From Octopus bimaculoides (Eukaryota), in assembly GCF_001194135.2 (NCBI RefSeq), contig NC_068990.1, positions 90,494,511 through 90,558,510 of the forward strand: 64,000 bases of DNA, given 5' to 3'. Below, piece after piece: positions 1,369-63,371 of the stretch; the stretch's first letter is position 1, and each line of letters begins with the position of its first letter. The position numbers and the translations under genes are program-made. The notes under the pieces are model-generated. The model was not told the origin of the DNA, made no database searches, and saw only the letters and a list, made by a program, of their open reading frames with translations.

Positions 1369-1800
1369 TCAAGCATCGTCATCACCATCATTATCGTGAT
1401 AATCCTCATCTTCACTGCCAGTACCAGCCTCAGCTTGTCATAGCTACCACCATTGTATCCAGTAGCGTTGTCAACATCCACCATTACGCCGCCATCGTTA
1501 TTTTTTCATGAAAACTACCACCGCAGCCATTATCATCTCGTTATCATCACTCTCCTCATCTTCAACATAAACATTCTTAACCTCAGAATATCTATGTCTT
1601 CCGCCTCCTCCCTCAAACCATCTTCATCATCATGGTTGTCAACGTTCTCATCACCTACATCTTCTGTCTCCGACTTATTAAGATCATTGTTATTGTCATC
1701 ATCTTCGTTTTCATTGTCGACAACTTCCGATTCGTCGTCGTCATAATCATCGTCATCATCAACATAAACAACAACAACAACAACAACAACATTGTCATAA
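1369..1800. repeat. Degenerate (CAT/CAC/CAA)n trinucleotide low-complexity tract
   Basis: CAT/CGT/CAA-rich tract that gives only low-complexity ORFs. Confidence 0.85.
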
Positions 1801-2369
1801 AGCGTCAAAATGTAAGAAAAACAATCATCTTATTACAGGAAGGCAAATATGCTATCATAATTCCATGTTTATACATGCTTATACATATACATGTATATAT
1901 ATAAATGCACATAAACGCGTATATACACAACAGATATGACACTAGTAGTGTCACGCAGTCCGAGAAAGACCATTCTGCATATCTTGATAAACAATCAGCG
2001 CAAGTGTTTTGTGATCAAGTGTTAACGCTGCTCATTGTCTCTCTCTCCATCACGTGACGTGTCGAAATGATCGCAGAGCAACGTGAAGTGAAGGGATTTT
2101 CCCAAGAACGCAACGCATCACCCGGTCCAGCAATTGAAACCATGATTTGGCGATTGCGAGTGAAAACTCTAAGCCCTAGCCGATGCTCCCTCACATAACA
2201 TAAGCTTATACTACAATAAACCTCTTACTCATTTGAAGATATTTGATATGCGATTCGTATGACAATATATCTTCTACATCTTTATATATGCGCTTCAATA
2301 AACCCAAACAATAAGACAAAATCCATACATCAAATAGATCCATACATATATTTAACAAGGCTAGTATCG

Positions 2370-2531
2370 TCATGACGTCTCTTATATTCTTTCTGGGCTA
2401 ATGGCGTACTTTGACTGTTAATATGCCATACTGTTTCACCATTTTGTCTACAAATTCTGCACTTATCACTTTCTGATATGTTGTCTATTCTGTATTCGAT
2501 GTAATTCGTTCTTAATGATTGCTCTTGGGTA
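2370..2531 (-). mobile_element. R4/Dong-like RLE non-LTR retrotransposon fragment (CCHC zinc-knuckle region)
   Basis: Minus frame reads QEQSLRTNYIEYRIDNISESDKCRICRQNGETVWHINSQSTPLAQKEYKRRHD, matching the CxxC...ETxxHIxSxCxxLA..Y..RHD motif of RLE LINEs. Confidence 0.8.
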
Positions 2532-2758
2532 CAACAGAAACAGGAAGAAAGAGTGAGAGAAAGTTGTGGTGAAAGAGTACAGCAGGGTTCGCCACCATCC
2601 CCTGCCGGAGCCTCGTGAAGCTTTAGGTGTTTTCGCTCAATAAACACTCACAACGCTCTTTCTGGGAATCGAAACCGCGATCCTACGACTGCGAGTTCGC
2701 TAACCTAACCACTGGGCCATTGCGCCTCCACACACACACACATACACACACACACACA

Positions 2759-2939: not shown

Positions 2940-3609
2940 TAGCATGAATACATGTGTGTGTATGCGTGTGCGTATATACAGACACATTTTATATTCCTAT
3001 GTGATATCCTGATGGCTACTTTGGGGGCAAAATACATGATCGTCACCACAAATGAGTGTGTGTGTGTTTGTATGTGTTTCCGTGTATCCTAGTTTGTACG
3101 TGCGTTTACACGAATACATCAGTGTGTGTGTGAAGAAGGACACTTTTTATTCATATCACACAAAAAAAAAAAAATTCATTCATATTTTATTTTATGTTTG
3201 ATGAATAAATAAAAATAAACTATAGCCATAATAATATCTTTATGTCTATGTGTTATCATGTCCGAAAGAACTTAACATCGTTTTAGAATTTAATATTCAG
3301 AGCAACGCATTGTATGAGAGTTTTCGGAATTCGATTTAATATATTATGACTTTAGAAAAACAATAACGTTTTTCATATATATTTACATTGTATCTGATTT
3401 ATTCTTTAACTCACACATTTATCAAACATTGCTATAATACGACGCATGACCGCACCAACATTTCGATTTTCATAATTTTCTGTATTATAAAGGTTTTTAA
3501 ATAAGATTTCCTGTAGTATTACGCATATACCTGTATACACATACACACATATATGATTGCGCGTGTGTTTGTGTCTCTCTCTATCTCTCTATTTCTGTAC
3601 ATCTATCTA

Positions 3610-3664
<55 letters not shown>

Positions 3665-4010
3665 ATCTATATANNNNNNNNNNNNNNNNNNNNNNNNNNN
3701 NNNNNNNNNNNNNNNNNNNNNNNNNNNNNNNNNNNNNNNNNNNNNNNNNNNNNNNNNNNNNNNNNNNNNNNNNNNNNNNNNNNNNNNNNNNNNNNNNNNN
3801 NNNNNNNNNNNNNNNNNNNNNNNNNNNNNNNNNNNNNNNNNNNNNNNNNNNNNNNNNNNNNNNNNNNNNNNNNNTATATATATATATATATATATTAATA
3901 ATTATTAATAATGACAATGTGACAACAAAAGAATGAATGAGACATCGATATGATGTAAAATAGAGGAATTTATCTATAAATATAATATGTGACAATTAGT
4001 TGGTTGACAT

Positions 4011-4071
4011 AATAAAACTCAGAGTTTCGGATACCGAGTATGAAGTCTGCTCCGGCATCTCATCAGTTGTT
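4011..4071 (-). ncRNA. Type I hammerhead ribozyme motif, Penelope-like-element type (palindromic helix III)
   Basis: Minus strand: AAACAA-CUGAUGA-GAUGCCG(gagcagacuucauacu)CGGUAUC-C-GAAA-CUC-U-GAG-UU-UUAUU. The core boxes are intact, helix II has 7 bp, helix III is ACUC/GAGU around 1 nt and the cleavage triplet is GUU. Deviations are one extra C before GAAA and a weak AU-only helix I. Confidence 0.6.
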
Positions 4072-5075
4072 TAGACAAAACGCTACGAGAAAAACCGTTA
4101 AATAAATGGAAATTACTCCAATAGGCCTTGTGAAAGTAATACTTCATTCATAGAATCCGCATATGCACACATATACACACACATACATGAAATCGAAGAA
4201 GGCACTTGTCTGAACACAGAACCATGAGGTTGGGAAGTAAACTTCTAGTCACACAGTCATACCAAACATCATATGGAATCTAACTGCATTCATCCCAGTA
4301 TTATCATTTGCAGAACAATGGAAAAGTCTGCTACAGATTGTGCCAAATTCATTGACTTAATGTGAATATTAAATTAGGGCTGCCATAACTAAAAAAGGTG
4401 AGAATAAAAATAATTTTTTTGTGTAATCCTTGTATGTTGTTAATATTATGAGAATGATAACGTATTCCCATTAATATGATTTTCACTGCTGGTAATATTC
4501 GTTTCAAATTTTAGCACAATGCCAGTAATTTTAAGGGAGAGAGTTTGTAGATTACTTTGATAATTTTTCATTCAAATATTTCATGTATGCATGTGTCAGC
4601 GAGTGGTGTTCCTTATACAAAAAGAGAATTTCAAAATGGGACAATCGATTATTGTGTTTATCTACCACTTCATGATTCTTCATATTTTAAGACGACGCAG
4701 TGTGATTAAGGAATTTGGCTGTTATGTCTCGTAGTGCAGGCGTTCTTTTATAAAGATTCCTATTTATATTTGTCATGCACTTGGTATAAATATATATATC
4801 GTATTGTTTTACATAAGCAGTCCAGCCTGGTAGACGGTACTCATCAGTCGGTGCAACAATAAGAAAATAATTGTTTTAAGCTATCAAGAAAATATAACAT
4901 CACATCATTTTAAATTTAATATAGTATATTTGATGATATACCATCAGGTCAAAACCAATAACAGTTTATTTGCTTGGCATTGATGTCAGTTGTATTGTCA
5001 GATGGAAATCGATATACGTATATCTGGGTGTAGTGTGCGGGTGTGAGTGTGTACGTGTAAACATTATACATATAC

Positions 5076-5154
<79 letters not shown>

Positions 5155-5454
5155 AACACACACACATATCGATTCCAGACGATATCAATGCTAAATCTAC
5201 ACATATAAGCAAACATATACATAGCTACATACATATATATAGAGAGAGAGACGGACAAATAGCTAGATAAATTAATAGATAGATGGATAGATAGGTAGAC
5301 AGATAAACGTACATATAGAAAACCTACAAGAGCATGACAACATTTAGGAATATGCACAAGACGCTGTGTAAATATATATTTAGCAAAAGCACTAAACCTA
5401 TATAAGTACATACGTAAACATATGTATGTATATATAAATATACATATATATATG

Positions 5455-5509
<55 letters not shown>

Positions 5510-5517
5510 ATATATAT

Positions 5518-5940
5518 CCTTTTATTTGTTTCAGTGATTTTACTTCGGCCATGCTGGAGCACCGCCTTTAGACGAGCAAATCGCCCACAAGACTTACTCT
5601 TTGTAAGCCTAGTACTTATTCTATAGGTCTCTGTTTTTGCCGAACCGCTAGATACAGGGACGTAAACACACCAGCATCGGTTGTCAAGCGGTGTTTGCGG
5701 GGGGGGGGGCACACACAGATACATAAACATACATATACACAAATATACCCACACGCACACACAAGCACAAACATATATATATACGACGGGGTTCTTTCAG
5801 TTACCGTCTACCAACCAAATCAACTCACAGGTCCTTGCTCGCCCTAGGCTACAGTAGAAAACACTTGCCCAAGGTGCCACGTTGTAGGACTGAACCCGGA
5901 GACATGTGGTTAGTAAGCAAGTTACTTACCACAGCCACCC
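5518..5940 (-). mobile_element. tRNA-derived SINE family A, full-length copy
   Basis: Minus-strand head (GGTGGCTGTGGTAAG...GGGTTCAGTCC, A/B-box-like), then GTGGCACCTTGGGCAAGTG, an internal (CA/TA)n tract and the tail GGTGCTCCAGCATGGCCG...AAACAAATAAAAG. The same sequence recurs at least 9 times in the window. Confidence 0.9.
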
Positions 5941-5959
5941 TGCACCTATGCATATATAT

Positions 5960-6010
<51 letters not shown>

Positions 6011-6059
6011 CATACATATTTGTAAATCTATATATGTGTTTATGTTATGCATGCATCTA

Positions 6060-6106
<47 letters not shown>

Positions 6107-6599
6107 GCGTGTGTGTGCGTGTGCCTGTGTGTGTATGTATATACGCATGTATAGTCTACATGTGTATAACTGTCTTTTTTATTCTGTTATTGATTCGTTC
6201 TTTACTCACGTTTCTTTATCGTTTTGTGACAGTTAATATAGTCATTGATTAATAGACATGGCAATTGTTGCTGTTGTTGTAATAGTTATTGCTTATGTGA
6301 CATTTATTGTTGCTGTTGTTGTTGTTGGTATTACTATTGTGAATGAAGAGAATGATTTTGCTGATATTTCCTTTTGGTTTATATTCTTTCTTTCCTCCTC
6401 ACACTCCTCCACCTTTATTCTTTTCTCAAAGAAACAAATAAAATGATAGCAAATTCTAAAAAAAAAACAAACAAGCAAAATAACGAAGCGAATAAAAACA
6501 AACGTAAAACAGACAAGTCGTAACAAACTCATTTCAATTGTTAAGTTTGTATACTTGACTCCCGACGACTCTCAGTCAAAAGCGATTTTTATATGTGTG

Positions 6600-6835
6600 T
6601 ATATGCAGTATAAGAGGCCGTGTATGCAATAAATGAATGCACCATCTTTAGATCGCTAACCACTACACACATTTTTTCTCTCCTTGTTTCTTTCTGTGTG
6701 CCTTTCTGTGGAAGAGCGTAGGCTCGAAACGTTAAAGACTTTTTCAATTCCCGAGCGTTATACATCCGTTATACATCAGTTTGTTTTCTACACCACCTGT
6801 CTTCATCTGTTGTTTTTTTGTGTGAATTCTCCCTA
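6600..6835 (+). mobile_element. Probable Penelope-like element terminal repeat fragment carrying a minimal hammerhead-like motif (6702-6737)
   Basis: CUUU-CUGUGGA-A-GAGC(GUAG)GCUC-GAAA-CG-UU-AAAG has minimal type I hammerhead topology with palindromic ACGU helix III and a core A6>U change. PLE assignment is inferred from the motif and the boundaries are approximate. Confidence 0.45.
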
Positions 6836-8064
6836 TATATATATATATATATATATATAGGGGCATAGGTTTGTAGATTATTGTGATTGGCTTCTTCTTA
6901 TCAATGATACATATTGCCTCGTTCATCACTGATTCATTCATCACTGATCCGAAATAACATGGCATGCTCAATCGAGAATGCCATGTTATAGTGTTTGATG
7001 CATTCGTACCCATCAACATGCCACCAATGAACAGACACAAAACGATGGTGCTTAATCCTAACAATCGAAGCAAACGAGTGCATTCTCTAAAAGAAACAGC
7101 AAACATAATCAAGACAATACACGACGACGGAAACTTCATAGTTCGAGTTCACGAGATTTGAGTGAATGAATCCGCCATTTGTTCCACAATCGAAGCATAT
7201 AGAGACGATTCATTTATCACTGTTTGTTTTGGTACCGACCTTCATGATAAACGACGATAGACGTAACCATAAAAGTTATAAAGTAATTTTATATCACGTT
7301 TGCTAGATATTCTATTTGTTAACTTTTAACTGTATCAGTCAACACTTTCCTGATATTATTTTATACCACTATTGTGGCTATACTAGATACATTTGCATAT
7401 AAATATTATATGGTCTATCAACTATAAGTGGTTGTGTTCGTTATTGCCAGCTGTTGCAGCTATTGGTGTGGCTATAATAGTTAGTATGACGAGTTACAAT
7501 AGCTATTGGTGTTTATAGAAGTTACTGGAGGCAATAAAATTTATTGGTGTCTAGAGTAGATTTTGTTGGCTATAACATTTAATATTATGACGATAGTAAT
7601 AATTAGTCGCGATATTGTTTCTGGCTAAAAGAGTAGAATCCAGATATAATTCAACATAGATTTACAATCCATGCATGCGTACATGTATGTTGTATGTCTT
7701 CGTATAATAGCGATGGATACAAACAGCAACAAAAATACGGAAACGTTCTCTCTTGATATTCTGCATCAAGCTTCAGTTACCCCTCGTTACTGTTGCCGTC
7801 ACAAATGATTGGGCTCGTTGAGAACATATCGCCATTGTTGTTCTTGTTCACGAATTGTGATATGAAAAAAAATAGGAAGTAAAAGTTTCAGTAGATCTGA
7901 TGTTATTCCATGCTTTTAATGCACGTCGACCGAGTGTGCTATTATCTGTGTCCCTTATCTAGCGACAGAAGTCTGATCAGGTCTCGTGGTTTGTCAGTGA
8001 GGTTATTCCATCCGATATACATATATATATATATACATATGGTGTGTGCGTGCGCGCGCGCATT

Positions 8065-8272
8065 TGTGTGTCTGTGTCTGTGTCCCGCAACATCGCTTGA
8101 CAACCGATGCTGGTGTGTTTACGTCCCCGTAAATTAGCGGTTCCATAAAAAGGACCGACAGAATAAGTACTAGGCTTACAAAGAATAAATCCTGATGTCG
8201 ATTTGCTCGACTAAAGGCGGTGCTCCAGCATGGCCGCAGTCAAATGACTGAAACAAGTAAAAGAATAAAAGA
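8065..8272 (+). mobile_element. SINE family A, 3' half
   Basis: CAACATCGCTTGACAACCGATGCTGG...GGCGGTGCTCCAGCATGGCCGCAGTCAAATGACTGAAACAAGTAAAAG is the reverse complement of 5518-5720. Confidence 0.9.
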
Positions 8273-8289
8273 ATTTCTCTATTCTCATC

Positions 8290-10800
8290 GCAGCTCTCTT
8301 TAATTCCGCTTTTTGGTTTTCGATTGATATCTTCCTTCAATACAGTTCGTAGCTATTTATGTTAGTTTTCCATTAGTTATTATGATATATTTTTTATAGT
8401 TTTTCAGGAAATAATTTATAATAGTTGTCTAGCTTCATAAGTCCTACTAAGTACTACTGGTAATTAGCTTTTTTAGGTTAGATTTTCTGTGGTGTATTCT
8501 ATAAATAAAACAATTCTTTTTCTTACCTAGTTCAACAAGTTCTTATTGCCATTAGTTGAGAACGTTAACATCATAACTATAACTTATCAGTGGCACAGTT
8601 CAAATATTGACGATTCTTATCTTCTATTTTAGTATTTAGCTATACAATAAGTATTAATCCCGTGTGTTTATATTATTACTTTACAAATTTTTCTTTCACT
8701 TGTATATGTTGTAATCTGTCCAATTCATTGATTCCTAATTTCTAGTGACTCTGTATTTGATCTACTTCACTTATCTTTGTTCTTTATCTTCCATTATATT
8801 AGGATTGTTATATTTATTATTTTTCAAGTTACTCTATTATATTTTCCTAATCCGTAATTTATATAAAATCCGTATACTATCTGGAGCAGCGTTTCTCGTT
8901 GGTTATTATCTACAGCAGTGTATAGTGTTAGGGTGTTTCCTTAAAAAAACATTAGAGACACTCCAGTTTTAATGGAAACGGACCTAATTATTATAGTTAC
9001 TCACTTTTCTTTGTATAAATAGAATTTGTAATAATTTACTCTGGCGTGTTTTAACGTTTCAACTTATTGTTATTGATATATTATTCAACGATATTTCTAG
9101 GTTCTAGGAGTAGGACACACTGCCTAAAGCTTTCCGGTAATCAACTTATATTATAATCAGACGCAGCTTTATCCTGATACTCTTCGATCAGTAATTAATA
9201 TTTGCATATGTATGAGTCTTTGAAACATCGATTTGGTTTTTATTACTCGTATATTTTTCTGATCTTTATTTATTTTTTGCAACATCATTGCAGGCAAATC
9301 CTGATAAATTGTAAGTTCATGCTGGGCATCGAGATGGTTTTCTTCTCAGTGACGCAGTCAGTTGTTGCTTTCGGCTCCGTCCGTATCTCATTAGCCCTCT
9401 CTAATAGCAGCTTACGTGTCTCTGTTACATATCTTAACCAGATATTTTGGATTTTGGTCATGTCCTCATAGTCTTCTAATTACTCGTTTATACTATATAA
9501 TCAGCCACAAGAGTTCAAGTTGTGCTTTTGTTGTTTTGAAAAATTTCGTTCACGATGATTGCTTTGCTGTCCTCACTTTTCTCCTAATTCTTACGCATAT
9601 CTGCCGTTCGTCCTTCAGTCATTTCTATTTCATGTTTCTTTTCTTTTTCCTAGATCTTCATAGCGTTCTTTCACGTTCGAAATGTTTGCTTTATTTGAAG
9701 AATTGTCGTTTCATTTCATATCACCGATTCTTTGTGATTCCTTATCGCATATCTCTTGATTTGAATAATGTTTTTCATTTTGGATAGATTTTTTTTGTAT
9801 GAGTTATATCTCTATAATATTGGTATGTTTTCTAATTTTACAGTTCTCTTATTTCATTATCAGTTTCATCAAGGACTGAGAGATATTTTCCTTTATTTGC
9901 TCTATTTCTCAGTAAGTTTGCTTTCCATTTTTTTTTGTAGAGTTTTATATTCCTACGCCTGTAAATCTGAGACAGTATCCATTTTCCTAATGGCTGATTC
10001 ATATATTATTTTGTTTAACCTGGTGATATCGATATTCGTGTGTCTGTTTTAATTAAGTCAGTGAAGGCCTGGCTCCCGAAGTTTTATTCTTGTTGCTATT
10101 TTATATCTGAGATGTATCCTTAGGAGGTACTTTCGCTTGTCGATAGAAATATGTTTTTAATTATTGCTTTCAATTCTTTACTGCAAACATAAGAACGTCA
10201 TGTTCATGCTCTCCATTTTTACAATCACACATTCTTAAATATTCTTTATAGTCACATTTATATTTTTAGCTGAGTTGTTCAGTTTTCGTTTTAGGGGACG
10301 TTATTATAAAGTTGTTCTCGGCTTGGTTTTGTATTTTGTTTCTTTTGTACACGACATATTAAATCCATCTTCGTGATTTGTGCTTCAAACGTTTATATTT
10401 TCGCTGTACATTCTGTGTTTGTTACTTGTAATTTCCTTATTTATTCTCTATTTCCAGGATCTTATTTTGATTTCTATAACTTTTCTCTTCGAATGAATTA
10501 TTTTCCTCGGTTAGATACTTGTTTGGGTCCACCGATACATTTAGATCCAAGTTGTTTTCCCTTCAAACTTTATACAAGTATACTGACGGATTTTTTGTCA
10601 TGGTGTATGGCTGTAGTAAGCCATGGATGTAGAATAGAAACGAACGTCATCGTATCGATTTTATACTCTTTTCTGTTTAATTTGCGAAACCTAAAGAATA
10701 AAGTCTGACCTTTCATATAATTTATATCCATTTTTGTACAGAGTACTTTTTTCCGGTGTTGTTGAGATTTTCGTTCCATTCTCGGACTTTATATTTATCA
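8290..10800 (-). mobile_element. Degenerate R4/Dong-like LINE, N-terminal domain through reverse transcriptase/thumb
   Basis: Broken minus-strand reads: VDYRKALGSVSYS at about 9100-9145 (IDYRKAFDSVPHS), KLGINELDRLQHIQVKEKFVK at about 8680-8750 (YKYLG region) and RIHHRKSNLKKL...GLMKLDNY at about 8430-8500 (HPKSDVERLY...GL). Many stops and frameshifts. Confidence 0.75.
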
Positions 10801-16548: not shown

Positions 16549-16910
16549 TAAGAGGAAGCGCTGGTAAGTTCATAGGCCGACTATGAAGGACTGATGCTTG
16601 AGCTGTTGAATCTTGCATGCGTTAATTTAATCTTTTCTTATTAATAACTGTATTGTTTATTTCCAGGTAAACTGATGTCTGATTGTTCAAAGAAGACTTC
16701 AGAAGTAATTGGTAGGGAGTTCTCTTAAAAATGGACAAAATTTAGCATCGTTGCATTATGAAGTACTTAGAAGAACATTCATGCTGACACGGTTGTTACA
16801 CTGGGGGATGATGCTCCAGCTTTATCAACGATGCAAAAATGGGCAGCTGAATTTAGGAGGGGACGGGAGAGCCTTGAAAATGACCCAAGGTCTAGATTCT
16901 AGCAATGGCC
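16549..16910 (+). mobile_element. Mariner (DD34D family) 5' relic: TIR-like start + transposase HTH
   Basis: ATG at 16731 gives MDKI*HRCIMKYL, then a shifted frame IHADTVVTLGDDAPALSTMQKWAAEFRRGRESLENDPRS (mariner N-terminal HTH). It is truncated where a SINE begins. Confidence 0.85.
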
Positions 16911-16919
16911 ACCATTGTA

Positions 16920-17135
16920 CCGTCGTATATATATGTATGCATGTGTGTGTATGTTTGTGTGTCTGTGTTTGTCCCTACCACCACCAACATCGTCCCCGTA
17001 ACACAGCGGTTCGGCAGAGAGAAGGACAGAATAAGTACTGGGCTTACAAAGAATAAGTTCTGGGGGCGATTTGTTCGACTAAAGGTGGTGCTCCAGCATG
17101 GCCGCAATCAACTGACTGAAACAAATAAAAGTAAA
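16920..17135 (+). mobile_element. SINE family A, 3' part, inserted into or truncating a mariner relic
   Basis: CGTCGTATATAT...GAATAAGTACTGGGCTTACAAAGAATAAG...GGTGCTCCAGCATGGCCGCAATCAACTGACTGAAACAAATAAAAG. Confidence 0.9.
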
Positions 17136-19504
17136 AAAAAAAATAAATACTTTTGCTCTTTCCACCGATACATAGATTGTAGTTAGAACGGAAAGTTATA
17201 GACTTTGCGTGAATTATTTTAAAGAAAGTAATCATTTTAGTAAATGTTTTCCCCTTTATCCTATCTTTTTCTTTTTTTAACCCAGCGAAAGACCTGAATA
17301 TTGAGAACGTACACTCGAGAATATAGCAGGGAATCTCCCACTTGCAAAATGGAATATTCTTGTGAGTTATATTGAATAGGACTCTATGCGTCTTACATAT
17401 ATAATGGCCGTCGTCACTTTTTGATCCATTATCACGTGACTGGCTTTCTGAATAGCTTCAACTGATTGAGATCCGATCATTTTAAACAACCCGCATATCT
17501 TCCTTATGAGACACTCGTCTTGATCGATTAAAATGAAAATCCGAACGTTTATTTGGAATCTACAAAGCCCAAGATTACAGCTGTCCTATTACTGTCGACT
17601 GAAGTATCACACAAAGAGTCGATACTACTTGTGTATCTTTATTATTGAAATTAACGTTTATCGTCGACCAGTTTAAATTTTAATCCTGAGTTAACATACT
17701 AAAACGTATAACAAGTGTATCAATAAATATATAAATATAACCTAGCTGATAATTCGAAAACCAAAATATTAAGCCTAATTGCTATATGTGAGATTTGAAT
17801 ATATAATTAACTAATTTACATATTTATTTAAATATTCAGCGAGTTGTCGTTCTAAGAAATATAATTCAGCGCAAAAGTACAAGTAACTACCATACGATGT
17901 CTAATCAGTGTGCCACTTATAGAACTTGAAATCTTTCATAAATGCATACAAATTAGCTCTATTTGTTGATGGAATTTTTGACAGAATAAAAATTTCATAT
18001 TTCAGAGTTTATTGTACAAATAAGCAATAAATAACACATTTTATTTTATGTATAGTGAAAACGTTGTAAAAGTTTGCTATCTGATGTATTTTGTAGTCAA
18101 TTTATGTCCCAGATTTATAAAATATAGAAAATTATAAAACACAGAACAACGTTTTGTTCTGTTTCTTTAAGTTTCTTTAAAGATTTCTTGGTATAATTAA
18201 TAATTTGTAATTTAATAAAGTATTTCTTCAAATATTGCGTCTGCAATTATAAATAAATGCATACACACACACACAAACACACACAAACACACACACACAC
18301 ACACACACANNNNNNNNNNNNNNNNNNNNNNNNNNNNNNNNNNNNNNNNNNNNNNNNNNNNNNNNNNNNNNNNNNNNNNNNNNNNNNNNNNNNNNNNNNN
18401 NNNTATATATGTATATATATATATATAAATTTTTGTAGAAAGACGTGCAGAAAGGAATTAATAACGAGAAAATTCATAAAATACGAAGCTATGTAATATG
18501 CTTTTATATGGGAGTCCTTTCAAAAACTATTTGTCTGCTGTACTATGTAAACCAGTTTACGTCCAGAAGCATCTCTATATCTCCAATGCAAAACTTTATT
18601 TTTCGTCAAATTGTATTTCAAGTCAGGTTTCACTTCTTTGAAAGAAATTGAAATTATTAAACGATCACAACACTAAGTTCTTCACCCAATGCTGGCAATA
18701 TCTTTAAAATTCGATTAGCTTTGAACATACACCATGTTCTGGATGTTTTGGTATTCTAAAACCTCCTACAGTCAATTTGTGTGCGAAGACATTTCATTTT
18801 GGTTCACAACGGTTCCTGATAATATTCTAGAATTTTCTAGGTTCGGTTAGAACTGATTTAGACGAGGCAGGGAATTAGCCTTATAGCAAACATTTTAATG
18901 TGATATTTTAATGACTAAAAGAAGAATAGGGACCAAACACATCGTTATATCAACAGTTTTAATTACTAAAACAGAAGTTTTCTGACAGTCTGCGGTTTTA
19001 GAAAATCGATTGCAACAAATATTTGCTTGGAACAAGAATTAATTCACCTAATCGTTCTCGTAACCAAACAGGTTTTATTCTCACAAGCATCAGCGCAGGT
19101 TGTATATAAACAGTTCATCTAATGGCTTCTATGAATCTATTTATCCAGCGCAACCAGGAAACATTATATATATGTCTCCCGACGAAGATTCTTTTTCGAA
19201 TCATTAGACATCACTCGTCGATAAAACAATTTATGTTATTTTCAATTGTGTGTACTCATTATTCGCCGACGCTAATCATAACTAGTTTTGTCGAACCCTG
19301 CTGTTACTTTGTCTTCACGCCTAATTACATCAAACTAGCTTGACAAGTTAACTAATGCTAACTATATTTCCGTGAATTCATGTCTCATTCAGTTGCCGCC
19401 AGAAATATAATCGTCACCGCACTTCGCTTCCTATAACTCTTAAAACTGCACGATAATGAAATTTTCAACATCCCTAAACACTGGCAATCCGTCGGTTTAA
19501 ACGA

Positions 19505-22143: not shown

Positions 22144-22210
22144 CATAAAATGTGTTAAAGACACGAAGGATTTTGTTCTTTTGGAAATCGGAAAGTTGTT
22201 GGTTTGACAT
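22144..22210 (-). CDS. cex: First coding exon of calexcitin / sarcoplasmic Ca-binding-type EF-hand protein (22 codons + 1 nt, phase-1 intron follows)
   Basis: Minus strand reads ATG TCA AAC...TTT TAT G|GTAAGC = MSNQQLSDFQKNKILRVFNTFY. This matches the squid calexcitin N-terminus as I recall it (MAAHQLSDFQRNKILRVFNTFYD, about 18/22 identical). The GT donor at 22143-22142 splits the Asp codon that opens EF-hand 1. There is an A at -3 of the ATG. Confidence 0.9.
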
Positions 22211-22265: not shown

Positions 22266-22398
22266 CTGTAGGATAAAAATAAGATAAACAATAGATAAAT
22301 ACATGACTCTTCAAAAGAAAAAAACAAATAAGTAGTTATATATAGATAAATATATTCACGCGTATGTGTGTATGTATATGTATGCGTGCTCATCTGTA

Positions 22399-22443
<45 letters not shown>

Positions 22444-23719
22444 ATGTATTTGTGTGTGTGCGCATGTATTTGTATACATTTGTGTGTATGAGCGCGCGCA
22501 CTTCTCTATGTGAAAAAATAGGGAAATACTAGCATACAGATTAGCGATAGATATACATACATAACGATAGATTGACAGGCGTACATAAAGATGCTTAAAT
22601 GATGTCGACACTAAATATATTCGATCTTTGAAGTAAATGTGTATGTTACACACATACGCACGTACATATAAAGTTTTGGACAGCATAGCATCAACAGAGT
22701 CTCTTTATTGTAATAGCTAATATATGGTTACGCTTCCATTCTGCTTCTTTGCATGGTGAGCACAAGATGGACGGTTTATGGGTTTTGTTGCAGTTGTTTT
22801 CACCAAATCTTACGAAGGTACATGTAAATGAGGCCGTTGAACCTCGTAACGTGTTCGTCACTCACCACAGCACCCTAACAATCAACTTTATGCCACAAAA
22901 TTTCTTTTATAACTGCCTACTCTATCGCTTCCAAATAAAAATAGATTGTAAAAAAAAGAACATTCAACCTTTCTGCTTGTTCTGCTCAAGTCACCTCACA
23001 GTGCACTAAATCTCCATCTCTTCATCATCTTCAGTGGGTCCCACCCTCTACACAGTGCGCCAATACCTTCTTATCCATTCCTCTGTAGCACATCTATCCT
23101 CTAAATTTTTCAATTCCTCTCCACATGTGTACCTTCAAATATTCCGATTTAACTACGACTCGTTGGTCTCGATGGTGTTACAAACATCAAGAAAGGAGTA
23201 TATATATATATATATATATATATNNNNNNNNNNNNNNNNNNNNNNNNNNNNNNNNNNNNNNNNNNTATATGAACACTTGTTGTTAGGAAAGTGCGGAGCA
23301 AAAGAGAAACGTAGTTTCTCCTTCATAAAATGGTGTTTCTCTTTTTCTACTTCATAGAAATTTTCAAGCTAATGGAGAGTCTTTGTGATGCTAATTCCTA
23401 CACGATAGCTTCTGGAATTTATCACCAACATCAGTAAAATGTTTGGCATTTTAGAGACCATAATAACCATAAAAAATACTCTGCACTCTCTAAATAATTC
23501 CTGTCCTTCTTTATTCCGTCACATTCTTTCTCGCCTATTTTTCCATTTTCTCCCTCTGTTGTTGTTTACATTTACATATATAGGGACACATATACGCATA
23601 CATATATATATGTATACATACATATAGGTATGCATGCATACATACAGACACAAACATGTAAAGAGAATACTTGCGAACATGCATACGGATATATGTGAGT
23701 GTGTATGTGAGTCGAGAGG

Positions 23720-25800: not shown

Positions 25801-26090
25801 AAACTAATGCCATTTTATTTTGGATAGGTATAATTACCAATACAGGAACATGTATCATACATCAAAATGAAGCTGGTCCTCTGTGGATCACATCCCTACT
25901 TCTCAACATAGTCACCGTTTCTCTCAATAGCAATGTTCCACCTTCGAATGAGAGCATGTATCCCTGCCCCGTAAAATTATGTTGACTATTCTTTCAGCCA
26001 CTTCTTCACTACAGTTTTCACTCCCTCGTCACTGGAATAATATTTACCTCTCAAACCCTCTTTCATGGGGCCGAAGAGATAATAGGTTTT
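25801..26090 (-). mobile_element. Mariner 3' relic (transposase C-terminus and subterminal sequence)
   Basis: Minus reads YYLFGPMKEGLRGKYYSSDEGVKTVVKKWLKE*ST*FYGAGIHALIRRWNIAIERNGDYVEK* (stop at 25896-25898), the region following the YSPDLAPSD motif. Confidence 0.9.
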
Positions 26091-27084
26091 TTTTTTACAC
26101 AGGATGTCACAGGATGTATGCAGTTGTACCTCTCCTTTCACACGTAAGTGTGAAATTGTGTGTGCGATGTGTGTAGATGTGTGTACGTGTGTGTGTGAGT
26201 GTGTGTGTACGTAAACGCGTATAGTCATGTTCTCAATCTATGATGCACAAATCTCCCATTCTAGACTCATTTTAACATGACACCAAAACAAGTCAGCGCT
26301 GGAACTCTATTGATTCAATATTTTATGATATCATAATCACCACACAAGACTGCTATCAACTAAATTAACTTAAATTAACTTAATTATTGTGTCTATGTTT
26401 AACACCACTTCACCAGCTACGAAACACTTAAATAAATATAAAATTATTCTAAATTTACAGGATATATTTTTCTGCAAATTATCTAGACGCGGTGTGTAAT
26501 GGCATCTCATTATGAAACTCATATTAAATTCCAACCATATTCGACATTGTTCTTTTGTAAACAAGCCAGAGGACCTCAACATCATCTCTCGGTTTATTGG
26601 AAAGAACAATTACATCCGTCTCAAATCACTTCCCATTCGCTTAAAAGATGAAAAGACACTTTAATATCTCTAATCCTATATAACACTAAACAAAGTGATG
26701 GGGTTGTCACGGGTGGAATATATATAATCAAGCCTTATTCGATCGAGGACGCCGTGTGGCTAAGCTGTAAGAAGAGTAATATTGTCTTTTATTGAAGTAA
26801 GAATCAATGTGTTATATATTGGAGCCATTTTAAAATACCTAAACGCCATTATATTTCGTCAAACTTTCATAGTTTCCAAAGTTTAACTTTGACCATTCAT
26901 TTACACATTTCGTTCTGGTGTGAGTAATAAGCTGTTTCGGAAGACTGAGATTTTTCCATGCATATCAAGAAGACTGGCGGTTGCCCCCCCCTCTCTCTAT
27001 CATTATTTATTCAGAGTCTTAATAATAAGAATATTCTATTTTCTTCAATAGACGCACAGCCTGAAATGTTGAGAGCGTGCGCTC

Positions 27085-30899: not shown

Positions 30900-31970
30900 T
30901 ACAAAGGTTCTAAAAATTTCAATACAAAACAGTTTTATTTAGAGGCGTAGGTAGTTCAAATTGTAAATGTTGCTTCCTTTTTACAAATCGTCTATTCGTT
31001 ATAATCTCCATCACAAGAAATATATTTATGCCATCGTTAAATCCAATCCTCAAATCTTCTTTGAAAGACTTTAGTTGTGCACTGTTTTGTCTACTTCCTC
31101 TCAACCAATTCCAACGCATCTGCGTCACCAGATCGTTCTCCAAAAATATTGTCCTTCGTGAGACCGAGCAGAGGTGAGTGTCGGTGGTGCGGTGGGACGA
31201 GATCGGGACCACGCGGTGGATTGGGGGACCTGTGCCCAACCCAATATACCGGTTGCCTGGCTTGTTGCCAACGTAATATGTCTTCGTACTTTGTCATGAT
31301 GCGTATCATTTACGAACTCTTCTTCGGTCACTTCCGCCTAATGATAGTCTTTGTGATGTCTCAATGAAGCGCTCGCTCGTCACGGTACAGATACTTTCAA
31401 GAAAATCAAAGCGAATGATGCCTTTGTCATCCAAACATTGTCACCATCACTTCCTGTATCGATCGCTGGAACTTGCAAAACTTCTAAAGTCCTGGATAAG
31501 AGATTTGCAGCCATTCCTTGAATTATGTCTTCCTTTTCAGGTCTTAAAGAGACACCAAAGTTTCATCAGACAAAGAAAAAGTGTCTTCATTGACTTTAAA
31601 AGCTTCCAGTAAATCAATTGAATTGTTCAGCAAGCTTACGGATTGCGAATCGTTTGTCAGCACGAATGATTTCGTCCACTTGCCGGCGATTCGTCAGTAG
31701 TCGTAGTTGATGGTTTTCACTATTGCTGATTTTCGTCCAACTCCGCACCTTGCTTTGTCAACAAAAGCACGCTGTGTCCTTTTGCGAATGTTCACGACTT
31801 CCACAGCCCTTTCGACAAAGACTGAATGACAACACGTCACTTCATGCAATGAGAAAGTAGGGTTAGTGTTATGGAGGTGTCACTCAACCAGCTTGATCAC
31901 TCTGAATAGCATGCGCCCATAGATGAGAATTGATGCCCATCTTTGCATTATATTTTGGACAAATCACGTA
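30900..31970 (-). mobile_element. Near-complete but internally deleted, degenerate mariner element with both termini
   Basis: Degenerate TIRs TACAAAGGTTCTAAAAATTTCAATACAAA (30900) and, on the minus strand from 31970, TACGTGATTTGTCCAAAATATAATGCAAA. Internal minus reads include NRRQVDEIIRADKRFAIRKLAEQ, GKVMVT-type WMTKASFALIF, LGWAQVPQ..PRGPDLVP (HPPYSPDLAP) and CDGDY. Length is about 1.07 kb against about 1.3 kb typical. Confidence 0.8.
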
Positions 31971-60819: not shown

Positions 60820-61025
60820 TACTACTACAACTATTACTACTACTTCTGCTACTTAAAAGCTCTTGAAGCCAAAGTAACACCACTAGTAGTGCTACTGCTA
60901 ACATTACGCACGTTCACTCGTATAGGAACGAATGCAACACTAAGTTCAAATGCTGCTGCTACTACTACTACCACTAGCACCATCACCAGCACCACCACTG
61001 TTGTTGCTTCTGTTACAGCATCAAC

Positions 61026-61068
<43 letters not shown>

Positions 61069-61078
61069 NNNNNNNNNN

Positions 61079-61112
<34 letters not shown>

Positions 61113-62767
61113 TGTGGTGGTGGTGGTGTAGTAGTGGTGGTGTAGTTGTGGTGTTGGTAGTAGTAGTAGTAGTAGTAGTAGTACGAGTGGTGGCGGTGGT
61201 GGTGATGGTAGTAGTAGTGGCGGTGGTGGTAGTAGTAATGGTGGTGGTGGTGGTAGGAGTAATGGTGGTGGTGGTGGTGGTGGTAGTAGTAGTGGTGGTG
61301 GTGGTGGTAGTGGTTGTTACTTTGTTGTGGTTGTCGTATAACCGTAGGTGAAGAGTGGTCGAGCAGGCATGAGATCAAAAGGCATTCCAGCCCTGACCAT
61401 CTCGTCTTTTTATGATTATGCAGCAGGGGCTGCATTATCCAAAGTGTCCTGTTTTTTAAATTCATTTACGACGGCGGCGGGATGTGATTCGAGGGAGATT
61501 AAGCTGCTATTTCCAACGGGTGCGTCGATCACTTTCAGAATTACTCGACATAGCAGTTCATGTTGACAATGGAAAGTGCAGGGTGTTTGTTGCTATGACG
61601 ACGACGACGACAATGATGATGATGATGATGATGGTGATGCTGATGATGCTGATGATGAGGACGACGGTAGTGGTGGTGGTGGTGATGGTGATGATGATGA
61701 TGACAACGATGATGATGATGATGATAATGATGGAGATGATGATGATGGCGGGTTGGTGATGGTATTGATAGTAGTTGTGGTGGTGGTGGTGGTGGTGGTG
61801 GTAATGTTGGTAGCTGTGGTAGTGGTGGTGGCAGTGGTGTCGGTAGAGGTGATGGTGGTAGTGGTGGAGGTGGAGGTGGTGCTGCTGCTGCTGATGATGA
61901 TGCTGTTTGTTGCAGTAGCGTCTGAGAATATGTTTATAGATTTTCTCCTGATGAGGGGTGGAGGTTAGCCGTGCAACTGATGATCATCGTGGCGGGGGTG
62001 GCGGGGGTGGTGATAAGGTTTGTGAGGATCATGATGCTATTAAAGAGTACGACGAAGGTATTGCTGCTGCTGCTGCTGCTGCTGCTTATGATGATGATGA
62101 TGATGATGANNNNNNNNNNNNNNNNNNNNTGTGATGATCATGATGCTATTAAAGAGTACGACGAAGGTATTGCTGCTGCTGCTGCTGCTGCTGCTTATGA
62201 TGATGATGATGATGATGACGATGATGGTAGATGCGAAGATATCGGTGATAACAACTTCTGTTGGCTTTGATGACAGTGACACAAATGATGACAGTAAACT
62301 GCAGCAGTAGCAGCAGCAGAGCAGTGCTCTGACATCACACTGGCACCCAACCACCATCACCACCACCACCGTTATCACTTCAGTTACTCGTTCTGATACT
62401 ACTACTACTACCACTACTACTACTACTACTACCACTACTACTACCACTACTACCACTACTACTACTACTACTACCACTACTACTACTACTACTACCACTA
62501 CTACTACCACTACTACTACTACTACTACTACCACTACTACTACTACTACTACCACAAATATCAATACTACTAAGGTTACTAGAACCACCACAACCCCTAC
62601 TAATACTATCTCATCAACTACTACCACCTCCACCGTTACTATTATTACTACAAGTAATACCAATTCCCCACACTAAATACTACTGCCGCTACATCTCCCC
62701 CTACCACGATCACTAAACCTAATAACATTTCTACTACTACTAATAATAATGATAATTGATGATGATG

Positions 62768-62843
<76 letters not shown>

Positions 62844-62877
62844 ATTAATAATAGTAATAACAACAACAACAACAACG

Positions 62878-62930
<53 letters not shown>
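60820..62930. repeat. Long mosaic of trinucleotide microsatellites (ACT, TAG, TGG, TGA, TGC, TAA)
   Basis: Directly visible. It is the source of the poly-V/T/D/M ORFs in the track. Confidence 0.95.
61355..61460 (-). mobile_element. Possible RTE-type LINE/SINE 3' tail fragment (a related plus-strand piece lies at about 59695-59730)
   Basis: Minus GATGGTCAGGGCTGGAATGCCTTTTGATC resembles plus GATGGTCACGGCCGGAACACTTCTGATC at 59698. The family assignment is from memory only. Confidence 0.35.
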
Positions 62931-63371
62931 GTTACAGTGTTCCTGCTTCAACTCGTTTTTATCGAAATAAATGACATCAGGGTATTAACCTAAAAAAATG
63001 TATAAAATGCAAATTCGGTTCCCGTTGGTTTTGAACTCGGAACTCAAAGCAAGTTAATTAAATCCGCAGCTGAGCATTTCGCCTGGCACCCCACCGATTC
63101 TGTCATTCATCAGCATTCGGTAATGTTAAGTTTTTACAAAAGCAGAAGACTACACAGCTTTGAGTGTAGAATCGATTTAACAGACAGCCACATGCAATTG
63201 GCATTTAGAAGACAGAACAGCAAAATCCACCCCGAATAGAATTTATAAAACGTAAAAAAATACCCGAAAGAATTTTGTTCCGCTCTCAACCAATTTTGCC
63301 CTTAAATATTGTAGGAGTTCATAGGTGGACGCAGAGCTATGTGGTTAAGACACTCGCATGTGTGTGAGTTT

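What the first reader, a model, noticed from the sequence alone, without database searches (positions are those of the whole stretch)
4011..4071. Hammerhead ribozyme motif oriented sense to the putative calexcitin pre-mRNA, deep in its intron
Seen: the minus strand has an intact CUGAUGA core, a 7-bp helix II (GAUGCCG/CGGUAUC), GAAA, a helix III ACUC-U-GAGU whose 1-nt loop cannot close as a monomer, and a GUU triplet (cut after 4016). Deviations are an extra C before GAAA and a weak helix I (4 AU pairs, 1 mismatch); a downstream UUGUC offers alternative pairing. Established: Penelope-like elements carry minimal type I hammerheads with palindromic helix III that are proposed to act as dimers, and intronic ribozymes occur in animal genes (CPEB3 HDV-like, amniote intronic hammerheads). 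Inference: if the calexcitin intron spans this site, a neuronal gene's nascent transcript carries a self-cleaving or trans-dimer-cleaving module that could affect co-transcriptional splicing or yield retrozyme-like RNAs.
Basis: partly seen in the sequence, partly recalled or inferred. Interest (0 to 1): 0.7.

Follow-up and report, generated by a model that had tools for sequence, protein, structure and literature searches.

The report
Lone hammerhead-like motif in calexcitin intron
A 62-base stretch deep in the first intron of a cephalopod calexcitin gene has every conserved base of a hammerhead ribozyme, but nothing I could test suggests it can fold or cut on its own, so it is most likely a dead transposon relic or a chance match.

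Summary
It has an intact CUGAUGA, a helix II of 8 bp rather than 7, an extra C, GAAA, CUC-U-GAG, a GUU site with the cut after 4016, and a 4-of-5 all-A-U helix I. A motif this good is expected about 5e-4 times per 64-kb window by Markov simulation. None of 2,518 decoy-core descriptors matched it on the real window. That still allows roughly 20 chance cases in a genome of about 2.7 Gb.

The only calexcitin exon in the window is exon 1 (22210-22144, minus), so the motif very probably lies sense inside intron 1.

Nothing supports activity:
- No Rfam hammerhead model matches, even at E<=10 on 91 bases.
- The hammerhead fold is 10.5 kcal/mol above the minimum free energy, and helix I has about zero probability.
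- GAAACUCUGAGUUUU is a 15-nt palindrome that sequesters G12-A14 and U17 in both monomer and dimer.
- The window holds no second copy, no tandem repeat, no discontinuous substrate, and no RT or GIY-YIG coding remnant in the 4.8 kb upstream (downstream frames were not scanned).
- No relatives could be retrieved.

Best reading: a solo, decayed Penelope-type hammerhead copy (about 0.45), or a chance match (about 0.38). A working intronic ribozyme gets about 0.06 and a C/D snoRNA about 0.03.

The parts
4067..4072 (-). Helix I, 5' strand (AAACAA, positions 2.6-2.1)
   Evidence: Read. Pairs 4 of 5 with 4015-4011, all A-U with one C/A mismatch. Pairing probability is about 0 in every context tested.
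4060..4066 (-). Conserved core box CUGAUGA (C3-A9)
   Evidence: Exact match. One of 12 CTGATGA occurrences on the two strands of the window.
4052..4059 (-). Helix II, 5' strand GAUGCCGG (G10.1 onward). It contains an AUG (4058-4056) that opens a 20-codon ORF.
   Evidence: 8 bp with 4037-4030. The ORF 4058-3996 is listed.
4038..4051 (-). Loop 2, 14 nt (AGCAGACUUCAUAC)
   Evidence: This is large compared with the 4-bp helix II and short capping loops of canonical metazoan type I hammerheads (PMC4209133).
4030..4037 (-). Helix II, 3' strand UCGGUAUC
   Evidence: Helix II pairing probability is 0.13-0.47 in the isolated 71-mer, but 0.002-0.05 in 131- and 231-nt contexts.
4029..4029 (-). Extra C between helix II and G12 (or, in the other register, C11.1 with C4030 bulged at 11.2)
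   Evidence: The single-nucleotide insertion known in natural and PLE hammerheads lies on the other strand, between A9 and G10.1 (PMC4209133).
4025..4028 (-). Conserved core box GAAA (G12, A13, A14, A15.1)
4018..4024 (-). Palindromic helix III, CUC-U-GAG
   Evidence: A 1-nt loop cannot close, so a monomer is limited to A15.1-U16.1, C-G and U-A with a CUG triloop. This same CUGA is what the snoRNA models read as a D box.
4016..4017 (-). U16.1 and U17. The predicted cleavage is 3' of 4016 (GUU triplet).
   Evidence: U17 pairs with A14 in most structures in which helix III forms.
4010..4015 (-). Helix I, 3' strand (UUAUUA)
4014..4028 (-). 15-nt palindrome GAAACUC-U-GAGUUUU, which competes with the active fold
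   Evidence: The dimer minimum-free-energy structure (-33.5 kcal/mol) pairs G12-A14 and U17-U1.2 in one continuous intermolecular duplex. In the monomer ensemble, A14-U17 and A13-U1.1 accompany helix III.
22144..22210 (-). Calexcitin exon 1 (MSNQQLSDFQKNKILRVFNTFY plus the first base of codon 23), followed by a GT donor at 22143-22142
   Evidence: Confirmed against Doryteuthis calexcitin and nine homologues.
4199..4261 (-). Fragment of the head of a cephalopod SINE, about 130 nt upstream of the motif on the same strand
   Evidence: nhmmer with a model built from eight SINE copies in the window, E=4.7e-6. The SINE tail does not align to the motif beyond shuffled controls.
3674..3894 (.). (TA)n run 3875-3894 and a 201-nt assembly gap 3674-3874, starting 116 nt downstream of the motif
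   Evidence: The gap could hide sequence. 7.5% of window positions have a (TA)n run this close, so the proximity is weak evidence.

Best explanation
The motif is most likely a solo, degenerate copy of a retroelement-type minimal type I hammerhead, of the kind carried by Penelope-like elements (PLEs) and their non-autonomous derivatives. It sits as a passenger in the sense strand of calexcitin intron 1.

In the parent elements such motifs have a long helix II, a short helix I and a small palindromic helix III. They cut poorly and only when two copies pair through helix III, or with help from the element's protein, to process multimeric element transcripts.

Here there is one copy, with four weaknesses:
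- an A-U-only helix I with a mismatch;
- an extra or bulged C at the helix II/core junction;
- U at position 17;
- a 15-nt palindrome that pairs core bases G12-A14 with U17-U1.2.

I therefore expect it to be effectively inert in the calexcitin pre-mRNA.

What is shown: the anatomy, its statistical rarity per window, the intronic sense position, and the unfavourable folding. What is inferred: the retroelement origin and the lack of activity.
For: - All 11 conserved core bases, the G10.1-C11.1 pair, an 8-bp helix II, a palindromic helix III and a UH site are present.
- Chance expectation is about 5e-4 per window by simulation. None of 2,518 decoy descriptors reached this quality on the real sequence.
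- The architecture matches published PLE variants: helix II of 7-8 bp, helix I of 4-5 bp, a palindromic 15.2-16.2 and loop 3, a bulged base inside helix II in the Drosophila virilis variant, and mostly solo genomic copies (PMC4209133).
- PLE remnants exist in Octopus and other cephalopods (PMC8557442).
- A (TA)n run, a preferred PLE target, lies 116 nt downstream.

Evidence for inertness:
- The hammerhead fold scores -1.4 kcal/mol against a minimum free energy of -11.9, with a z-score of 0.23 against shuffles.
- Helix I probability is about 0, and helix II drops to 0.002-0.05 in longer context.
- The dimer minimum-free-energy structure sequesters G12-A14 and U17.
- There is no second copy or remote substrate strand in 64 kb.
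- Genuine PLE hammerheads are themselves weak in vitro or need protein (PMC4209133, PMC11167929).
- Retrozymes are depleted from introns (bioRxiv 10.64898/2026.07.22.740005).
Against: - No family of related copies could be shown: none in the window and none retrievable from outside it.
- The PLE hallmark nucleotide between A9 and G10.1 is absent. The extra base is on the opposite strand instead.
- No RT or GIY-YIG coding remnant was found in three sense frames over the 4.8 kb upstream. The downstream frames were not scanned, apart from one ORF at 2330-2647.
- No Rfam hammerhead hit appears even at E<=10. Those models may in any case score PLE minimal hammerheads poorly.
- Loop 2 is unusually long, and U17 is, from my own knowledge, the least common base at that position.
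- The density of hammerhead-bearing PLEs in this genome is unknown, so the prior that favours a relic over chance is an assumption.
Confidence: 0.45

Rival explanations
1. Pure chance match. An 8-bp hairpin in AT-rich intronic DNA happens to be flanked by CUGAUGA and GAAA and by a short palindrome. It has no ancestry in any ribozyme and no function.
For: - The first stage was a scan. At about 5e-4 per 64-kb window, roughly 20 such motifs are expected in a genome of about 2.7 Gb.
- Every non-core feature is marginal or atypical: an extra C on the wrong strand, a 14-nt loop 2, U17, and a 4-bp A-U helix I with a mismatch.
- No Rfam hammerhead hit.
- The region folds no better than shuffled sequence, z = 0.23.
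- No related copy anywhere I could search.
- No PLE coding sequence in the 4.8 kb upstream.
- The original PLE-hammerhead study also discarded descriptor hits that could not be grouped into families (PMC4209133).
Against: - For a single window the motif is a 1-in-2,000 event, and no decoy core reached it.
- The closing pair of helix II is the canonical G-C, which I estimate (not computed) at about 8% of random pairs, and helix III is palindromic. Neither was required by the descriptor.
- Other metazoan genomes carry thousands of PLE hammerheads (PMC4209133). If that holds here, real copies would outnumber chance ones.
Confidence: 0.38
2. A working intronic ribozyme. The motif would cleave the nascent calexcitin pre-mRNA after 4016, acting as a monomer with a 3-bp helix III, as a dimer between transcripts, or with protein help. 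It would thereby influence splicing or expression, or release retrozyme-like RNA.
For: - Intact core and a UH site in the sense orientation inside the transcription unit.
- There is precedent for conserved intronic ribozymes in animals, and for protein-assisted cleavage by a PLE hammerhead that is inactive alone (PMC11167929).
- Nearest-neighbour folding ignores the tertiary and non-canonical contacts of the core.
Against: - The hammerhead fold lies 10.5 kcal/mol above the minimum free energy.
- Helix I probability is about 0.
- The palindrome pairs A13, A14 and U17.
- There is no partner copy within 64 kb and no remote substrate strand.
- No Rfam match, whereas the conserved amniote intronic hammerheads have their own Rfam families, HH9 and HH10.
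- Hammerhead repeats are depleted from introns in vertebrates, which suggests selection against active sense copies (bioRxiv 10.64898/2026.07.22.740005).
- No conservation data exist.
Confidence: 0.06
3. An intron-encoded box C/D snoRNA of about 62 nt. It would have C box (C)UGAUGA at 4066-4060, D box CUGA at 4022-4019, and a terminal stem AAAC (4072-4069) with GUUU (4018-4015).
For: - The best sub-threshold Rfam matches to this stretch are C/D families: SNORD113 at 15.9 bits and SNORD69 at 12.3 bits.
- The sense intronic position is the usual home of animal snoRNAs.
Against: - The scores are far below the gathering thresholds of 36-37 bits.
- An arrangement of equal quality occurs a second time in the same window, at about 1632 on the minus strand, so it is at chance level.
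- The first C-box base is C, not a purine.
- There is one nucleotide too many between the terminal stem and the C box.
- The 37-nt interior has no recognisable D' or C' boxes.
- Both would-be guide regions are paired with each other in the 8-bp stem.
- Calexcitin is not a typical snoRNA host gene (my own knowledge).
Confidence: 0.03

Closest known systems
Minimal hammerheads of Penelope-like elements (Cervera and De la Pena 2014, PMC4209133), including the Drosophila virilis variant
   Same: - Type I topology and an intact CUGAUGA/GAAA core.
- A G10.1-C11.1 closing pair.
- A long helix II (7-8 bp in PLEs, 8 bp here) and a short helix I (4-5 bp in PLEs, 4 of 5 here).
- A small palindromic helix III that implies action as a dimer.
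- A bulged base within helix II, as in D. virilis.
- Occurrence mostly as solo copies without an adjacent ORF.
   Different: - The conserved extra nucleotide between A9 and G10.1 is missing. The unpaired base here is on the 3' strand, next to G12.
- Loop 2 is 14 nt, and the cleavage-site base is U17.
- No pseudo-LTR, no RT or endonuclease remnant, and no family of copies could be shown.
Non-LTR retrozymes and satellite hammerheads of metazoans, such as newt, axolotl, mussel and coral (PMC7229834)
   Same: Type I hammerheads in AT-rich DNA. Some have a very weak, palindromic helix III and cut efficiently only as dimers.
   Different: - Those sit in head-to-tail repeats of about 170-400 bp and have 6-bp helix I, 4-bp helix II and conserved loop 1-loop 2 contacts. 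Here there is no tandem repeat and no loop-loop candidate.
- Retrozymes are reported to be depleted from introns (bioRxiv 10.64898/2026.07.22.740005).
Conserved intronic hammerheads of amniotes (Rfam HH9, HH10) and the CPEB3 HDV-like ribozyme
   Same: Sense-strand position inside an intron of a protein-coding gene, here one described as neuronal.
   Different: Those are single-copy, deeply conserved and fold stably as monomers, and the two hammerheads are recognised by dedicated Rfam models. This motif matches none of them, and its conservation is unknown.
Box C/D snoRNAs
   Same: A UGAUGA and CUGA pair with a 4-bp flanking stem, in an intronic sense location. These families give the top sub-threshold Rfam hits.
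   Different: Scores are less than half the gathering threshold. There are no internal D' or C' boxes, the guide regions are self-paired, and an equal arrangement recurs by chance in the window.

Membership tests
Hammerhead ribozyme (general, type I) | Conserved core: C3 U4 G5 A6 N7 G8 A9, G12 A13 A14, A15.1-U16.1, and H17 not G | tested here: met
   CUGAUGA 4066-4060, GAAA 4028-4025, U16.1 at 4017, U17 at 4016.
Hammerhead ribozyme (general, type I) | The core is uninterrupted: helix II abuts A9 and G12, with G10.1-C11.1 closing it | tested here: inconclusive
   G10.1 (4059) pairs with C4030 or C4029. Either way one C is unpaired, at the junction or at 11.2. The effect on catalysis is unknown.
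Hammerhead ribozyme (general, type I) | Three helices that can form together around the core | tested here: not met
   - Helix II can form.
- Helix I has a pairing probability of about 0.
- Helix III forms mainly as the extended palindrome that consumes A13, A14 and U17.
- The full hammerhead fold scores -1.4 kcal/mol against a minimum free energy of -11.9.
- Caveat: this rests on nearest-neighbour energies only.
Hammerhead ribozyme (general, type I) | Match to a curated covariance model (Rfam Hammerhead_1, _3, _II, HH9, HH10) | tested here: not met
   No hit at gathering score, nor at E<=10 in 701 bases or 91 bases.
Hammerhead ribozyme (general, type I) | Site-specific self-cleavage | not testable with these tools
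   Needs in vitro transcription and cleavage assays.
PLE minimal hammerhead (PMC4209133) | Belongs to a genome-wide consensus family with covariation and compensatory changes | not testable with these tools
   No other copy in the window. The host genome was not searchable. Outside look-ups found nothing relevant.
PLE minimal hammerhead (PMC4209133) | [quoted passage not shown] | tested here: not met
   A9 (4060) is followed directly by G10.1 (4059). The unpaired C is on the 3' strand.
PLE minimal hammerhead (PMC4209133) | Conserved G10.1-C11.1 pair, long helix II (7-8 bp) and short helix I (4-5 bp) | tested here: met
   A G-C closing pair, an 8-bp helix II, and 4 of 5 pairs in helix I.
PLE minimal hammerhead (PMC4209133) | [quoted passage not shown] | tested here: met
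   ACUC-U-GAGU is palindromic around a central U. However, the palindrome runs on into the core.
PLE minimal hammerhead (PMC4209133) | Located in a pseudo-LTR next to an RT/GIY-YIG ORF, or in a truncated PLE | tested here: inconclusive
   No Pfam family in three sense frames over the 4.8 kb upstream. Most published copies are also solo, so absence is not decisive. Downstream frames were not scanned, and the 201-nt gap downstream is unreadable.
Non-LTR retrozyme | Head-to-tail repeats of about 170-400 bp, each with a hammerhead | tested here: not met
   The 1-kb region around the motif has no repeat in the window apart from microsatellites. No second hammerhead-like motif was found.
Box C/D snoRNA | C box RUGAUGA and D box CUGA brought together by a terminal stem, scoring above the family threshold | tested here: not met
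   SNORD113 scores 15.9 bits against 36, and SNORD69 12.3 against 37. The first base is C, and the spacing is off by one. An equal arrangement occurs by chance at about 1632 on the minus strand.
Box C/D snoRNA | Guide of 10 nt or more complementary to rRNA or snRNA, ending so that the 5th nucleotide upstream of D or D' faces the target | not testable with these tools
The putative guides pair with each other in the 8-bp stem.

The most novel reading that the evidence does not exclude
A Penelope-type hammerhead variant, with its unpaired base on the 3' side of helix II, is retained in the sense strand of calexcitin intron 1. With a protein chaperone or transient dimerisation, it cleaves a fraction of nascent transcripts and so tunes expression of a calcium-binding gene described as neuronal in cephalopods.
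Probability: 0.05. Interest if true: 0.6.

Novelty: new member of a known kind. Interest (0 to 1): 0.2.

Why it matters
If it were active, this would be an invertebrate counterpart of the conserved intronic ribozymes of amniotes. It would show a transposon-type hammerhead acting on a host pre-mRNA in a gene linked to neuronal signalling.

As the evidence stands, its value is more modest. It is a worked example of how a complete hammerhead core plus a good helix II can occur without a foldable ribozyme. It also shows that copy-number and covariation data, not the core alone, decide such calls. In addition it documents that calexcitin intron 1 exceeds 22 kb in this assembly.

Tried and rejected
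1. Rfam at gathering score on the whole window, and at E<=10 on 701 and 91 bases, gave no hammerhead family. Only weak C/D snoRNA and miscellaneous hits appeared.
2. Second CTGATGA...CGAAA match at 63077-63113 (minus): no helices form, so it is not a hammerhead.
3. Idea that the motif is the diverged tail of the adjacent cephalopod SINE: only the SINE head fragment (4261-4199) is significant. Local alignments of four SINE tails to the motif region score within shuffled controls.
4. PLE coding remnant upstream: no Pfam family in three sense frames of 3875-8700, nor in the ORF at 2330-2647.
5. Relaxed cores (CUGANGA, and the U3-A8 covariant) gave only an AT-rich hit at 3425 (minus strand) that I judge unconvincing.
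6. Discontinuous hammerhead: no matching substrate strand in the window at up to 3 mismatches.
7. Relatives elsewhere:
   - Exact look-ups of the ORFs 4147-4019 and 7139-6744 found nothing on record.
   - A homologue search with the 42-aa ORF across the motif found nothing.
   - A metagenome pattern scan gave one GC-rich, apparently bacterial contig with no helix II and no Rfam hit, which I treat as a chance match.
   - I could not fetch the orthologous calexcitin gene, because no octopus calexcitin protein was returned.
8. C/D snoRNA reading: at chance level.
9. My impressions of mariner-like and LINE-like ORFs elsewhere in the window got no Pfam support. ARAGORN found no tRNA genes.

Full report
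**What is there.** On the minus strand the window reads 5'-AAACAA-CUGAUGA-GAUGCCGG-(14 nt)-UCGGUAUC-C-GAAA-CUC-U-GAG-U-U-UUAUUA-3', spanning 4072 to 4010. In hammerhead numbering:
- C3-A9 is 4066-4060.
- Helix II is 4059-4052 paired with 4037-4030.
- An unpaired C sits at 4029. Read in the other register, C4029 is C11.1 and C4030 is bulged at 11.2.
- G12-A15.1 is 4028-4025.
- Helix III is CUC-U-GAG at 4024-4018.
- U16.1 is 4017 and U17 is 4016, so a cut would fall after 4016.
- Helix I is four A-U pairs around a C/A mismatch (4071-4067 with 4015-4011).

A descriptor script recovered exactly this solution and no other among the 12 CTGATGA sites on both strands.

**Is it more than chance?** I simulated 300,000 CTGATGA seeds in order-1 Markov sequence with the window's dinucleotide content. 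Twelve gave a motif at least as good (helix II >=7 bp, helix III >=3 bp, helix I >=4 of 6, with one unpaired base allowed on either side of helix II). That is about 5e-4 expected per window.

I then checked whether real sequence is richer in hairpins than the model. I ran 2,520 descriptors on the real window, with the two core boxes replaced by permutations of the same letters. The only two hits of that quality were the candidate itself and a one-base-shifted reading of it. Ten decoys reached the middling class, as the simulation predicts. The motif is therefore a roughly 1-in-2,000 event for one window. A genome of about 2.7 Gb would still hold some 20 by chance. I do not know how many windows the first stage read.

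**Where it sits.** Calexcitin exon 1 is at 22210-22144 on the minus strand (MSNQQLSDFQKNKILRVFNTFY, then a GT donor). My probe sequence came from memory, but it proved 97% identical to the deposited Doryteuthis pealeii calexcitin. Ten real homologues, used as tblastn queries, hit only this exon and all stop at the same FY boundary. No other part of the protein is found anywhere in the window.

The remaining 170 or so codons must therefore lie beyond coordinate 1. Intron 1 exceeds 22 kb, and the motif is sense and intronic. The one caveat is that an exon could hide in one of the assembly gaps, which total 925 N between 1 and 22143. In that case the motif would still be intronic. The exon's similarity to squid calexcitin and the SINE copies carrying CCTTGGG (PMC5786205) point to a cephalopod.

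**Does it look like a working ribozyme?**
- *Curated models.* No Rfam hammerhead family matches at gathering score, nor at E<=10 when only 701 or 91 bases are searched. Those models may score PLE minimal hammerheads poorly, so this is not decisive.
- *Monomer folding.* The minimum-free-energy structure of the 71-76-mer (-11.9 kcal/mol) is not the hammerhead. The hammerhead fold scores -1.4 kcal/mol. The sequence folds no better than its shuffles (z = 0.23).
- *Ensemble.* Helix I has a pairing probability of about 0. Helix II reaches 0.45 in isolation but 0.002-0.05 in 131- and 231-nt contexts, where the CUGAUGA box pairs with upstream GCGUUUUGUC. When helix III forms, it is almost always extended by A14-U17 and A13-U1.1.
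- *Dimer.* GAAACUC-U-GAGUUUU is a 15-nt palindrome. In the predicted dimer it forms one continuous intermolecular duplex that buries G12, A13, A14 and the cleavage-site base. Dimerisation, the mechanism proposed for such motifs, would here favour an inactive pairing.

These are nearest-neighbour predictions and ignore tertiary contacts. Even so, they all point the same way.

**Context.**
- The 1 kb around the motif has no other copy in the window.
- No second hammerhead-like motif exists, even with relaxed cores.
- No remote substrate strand exists.
- There is no tandem repeat.
- Three sense frames over the 4.8 kb upstream contain no Pfam domain, so no RT or GIY-YIG remnant was found there. 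The downstream frames were not scanned, apart from one ORF at 2330-2647.
- A fragment of a cephalopod SINE head lies at 4261-4199, but the motif does not align to the SINE tail.
- A (TA)n run begins 116 nt downstream and a 201-nt assembly gap follows it. PLEs prefer (TA)n targets (PMC8557442), but 7.5% of positions in this window are as close to such a run.

**Comparison with known kinds.** The PLE minimal hammerheads (PMC4209133) have these features:
- a helix II of 7-8 bp;
- a helix I of 4-5 bp with an ill-defined loop 1;
- a G10.1-C11.1 pair;
- a palindromic 15.2-16.2 and loop 3;
- an unpaired base between A9 and G10.1;
- occurrence mostly as solo copies;
- little or no self-cleavage as single motifs.

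The Drosophila virilis variant adds a bulged base inside helix II and a 2-bp helix I. The Anolis Poseidon hammerhead cuts only with the element's protein present (PMC11167929).

The candidate shares the long helix II, the short helix I, the G-C closing pair, the palindromic helix III and the solo state. It lacks the 9/10.1 nucleotide, having its unpaired base on the other strand. It has a long loop 2 and U17. Family membership through covariation, the feature that matters most, could not be tested. It is not a retrozyme, because there is no tandem array. It does not resemble the conserved amniote intronic hammerheads, which have their own Rfam models.

**The snoRNA rival.** The best sub-threshold Rfam hits are box C/D families, SNORD113 at 15.9 bits and SNORD69 at 12.3 bits. 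They read UGAUGA as the C box, the CUGA inside helix III as the D box, and AAAC/GUUU as the terminal stem. Several points argue against this reading:
- The scores are under half the thresholds.
- The first C-box base is not a purine.
- The spacing is off by one.
- There are no internal boxes.
- The two would-be guides pair with each other.
- An arrangement of equal quality occurs again at about 1632 on the minus strand.

I rate it at chance level.

**Attempts to obtain relatives.**
- Exact look-ups of two window ORFs found nothing.
- A homologue search with the 42-aa ORF spanning the motif found nothing.
- A pattern scan of metagenome contigs returned one GC-rich, apparently bacterial contig without helix II or any Rfam hit.
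- No octopus calexcitin protein was returned that could have led to an orthologous gene.
- I found no paper reporting hammerheads in cephalopods.

**Verdict.** The sequence observation is correct and locally non-random, and the sense-intronic placement is well supported. The functional inference is not supported.

I weigh a solo, decayed PLE-type hammerhead copy at about 0.45. It is favoured if cephalopods carry hammerhead-bearing PLEs at densities like those of other metazoans, which is an assumption. I weigh a pure chance match at about 0.38, a working intronic ribozyme at about 0.06 and a C/D snoRNA at about 0.03. Under the two leading readings the motif is an inert passenger. Copy number and covariation in the full genome, the orthologous intron of related species, and a simple cleavage assay would settle it.

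Noticed in passing
window 22144-22210 (-), donor GT at 22143-22142: Calexcitin exon 1 (22 codons plus 1 base). It is the only calexcitin exon in the 64 kb, so intron 1 exceeds 22 kb. The upstream region (22300-22500) is rich in TA/CA microsatellites.
   Followed up: yes
window 5942-5502 (-), 48452-48052 (-), 57840-57457 (-); partial copies at 7964-8280 (+), 15399-15142 (-), 16870-17149 (+), 49734-49562 (-), 51923-51747 (-); fragment at 4261-4199 (-): At least eight copies of one SINE of about 400-440 bp. It contains CCTTGGG, the conserved cephalopod 'Ceph-domain' sequence, and has an internal TA/TG microsatellite. Three partial copies (15399-15142, 49734-49562, 51923-51747) lie next to assembly gaps.
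   Followed up: partly
window 3996-4058 (-): An AUG at the start of helix II opens a 20-codon ORF (MPEQTSYSVSETLSFIMSTN). In the Anolis Poseidon PLE the element's ORF also starts at the beginning of stem II of its hammerhead (PMC11167929). Here the frame closes at once, so this may be coincidence.
   Followed up: no
window about 1575-1645 (-): A second box C/D-like arrangement: AUGAUGA, then 40 nt, then CUGA, with an AACC/GGTT flanking stem. It lies inside an acidic low-complexity stretch. No Rfam hit at gathering score.
   Followed up: partly
window 63077-63113 (-): The only other CTGATGA...CGAAA pair in the window. No hammerhead helices form.
   Followed up: yes
window 3674-3874 and 15 other N runs (3,000 N in total): This is a draft assembly in which many of the gaps are bordered by microsatellites. 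The 201-nt gap starts 136 nt downstream of the motif's 3' end (4010), so its content, including any second copy, is unknown.
   Followed up: no
window 61000-62900: About 2 kb of imperfect trinucleotide repeats (GTA, GTG and GAT units), arranged as inverted blocks 61142-61317 and 62350-62606 at 72-78% complementarity.
   Followed up: no
window 2330-2647 (-), 25986-26228 (-), 30919-31309 (-): ORFs that looked to me like a LINE C-terminal zinc-knuckle region and mariner-type transposase ends. Pfam gave no support, so these remain impressions only.
   Followed up: partly
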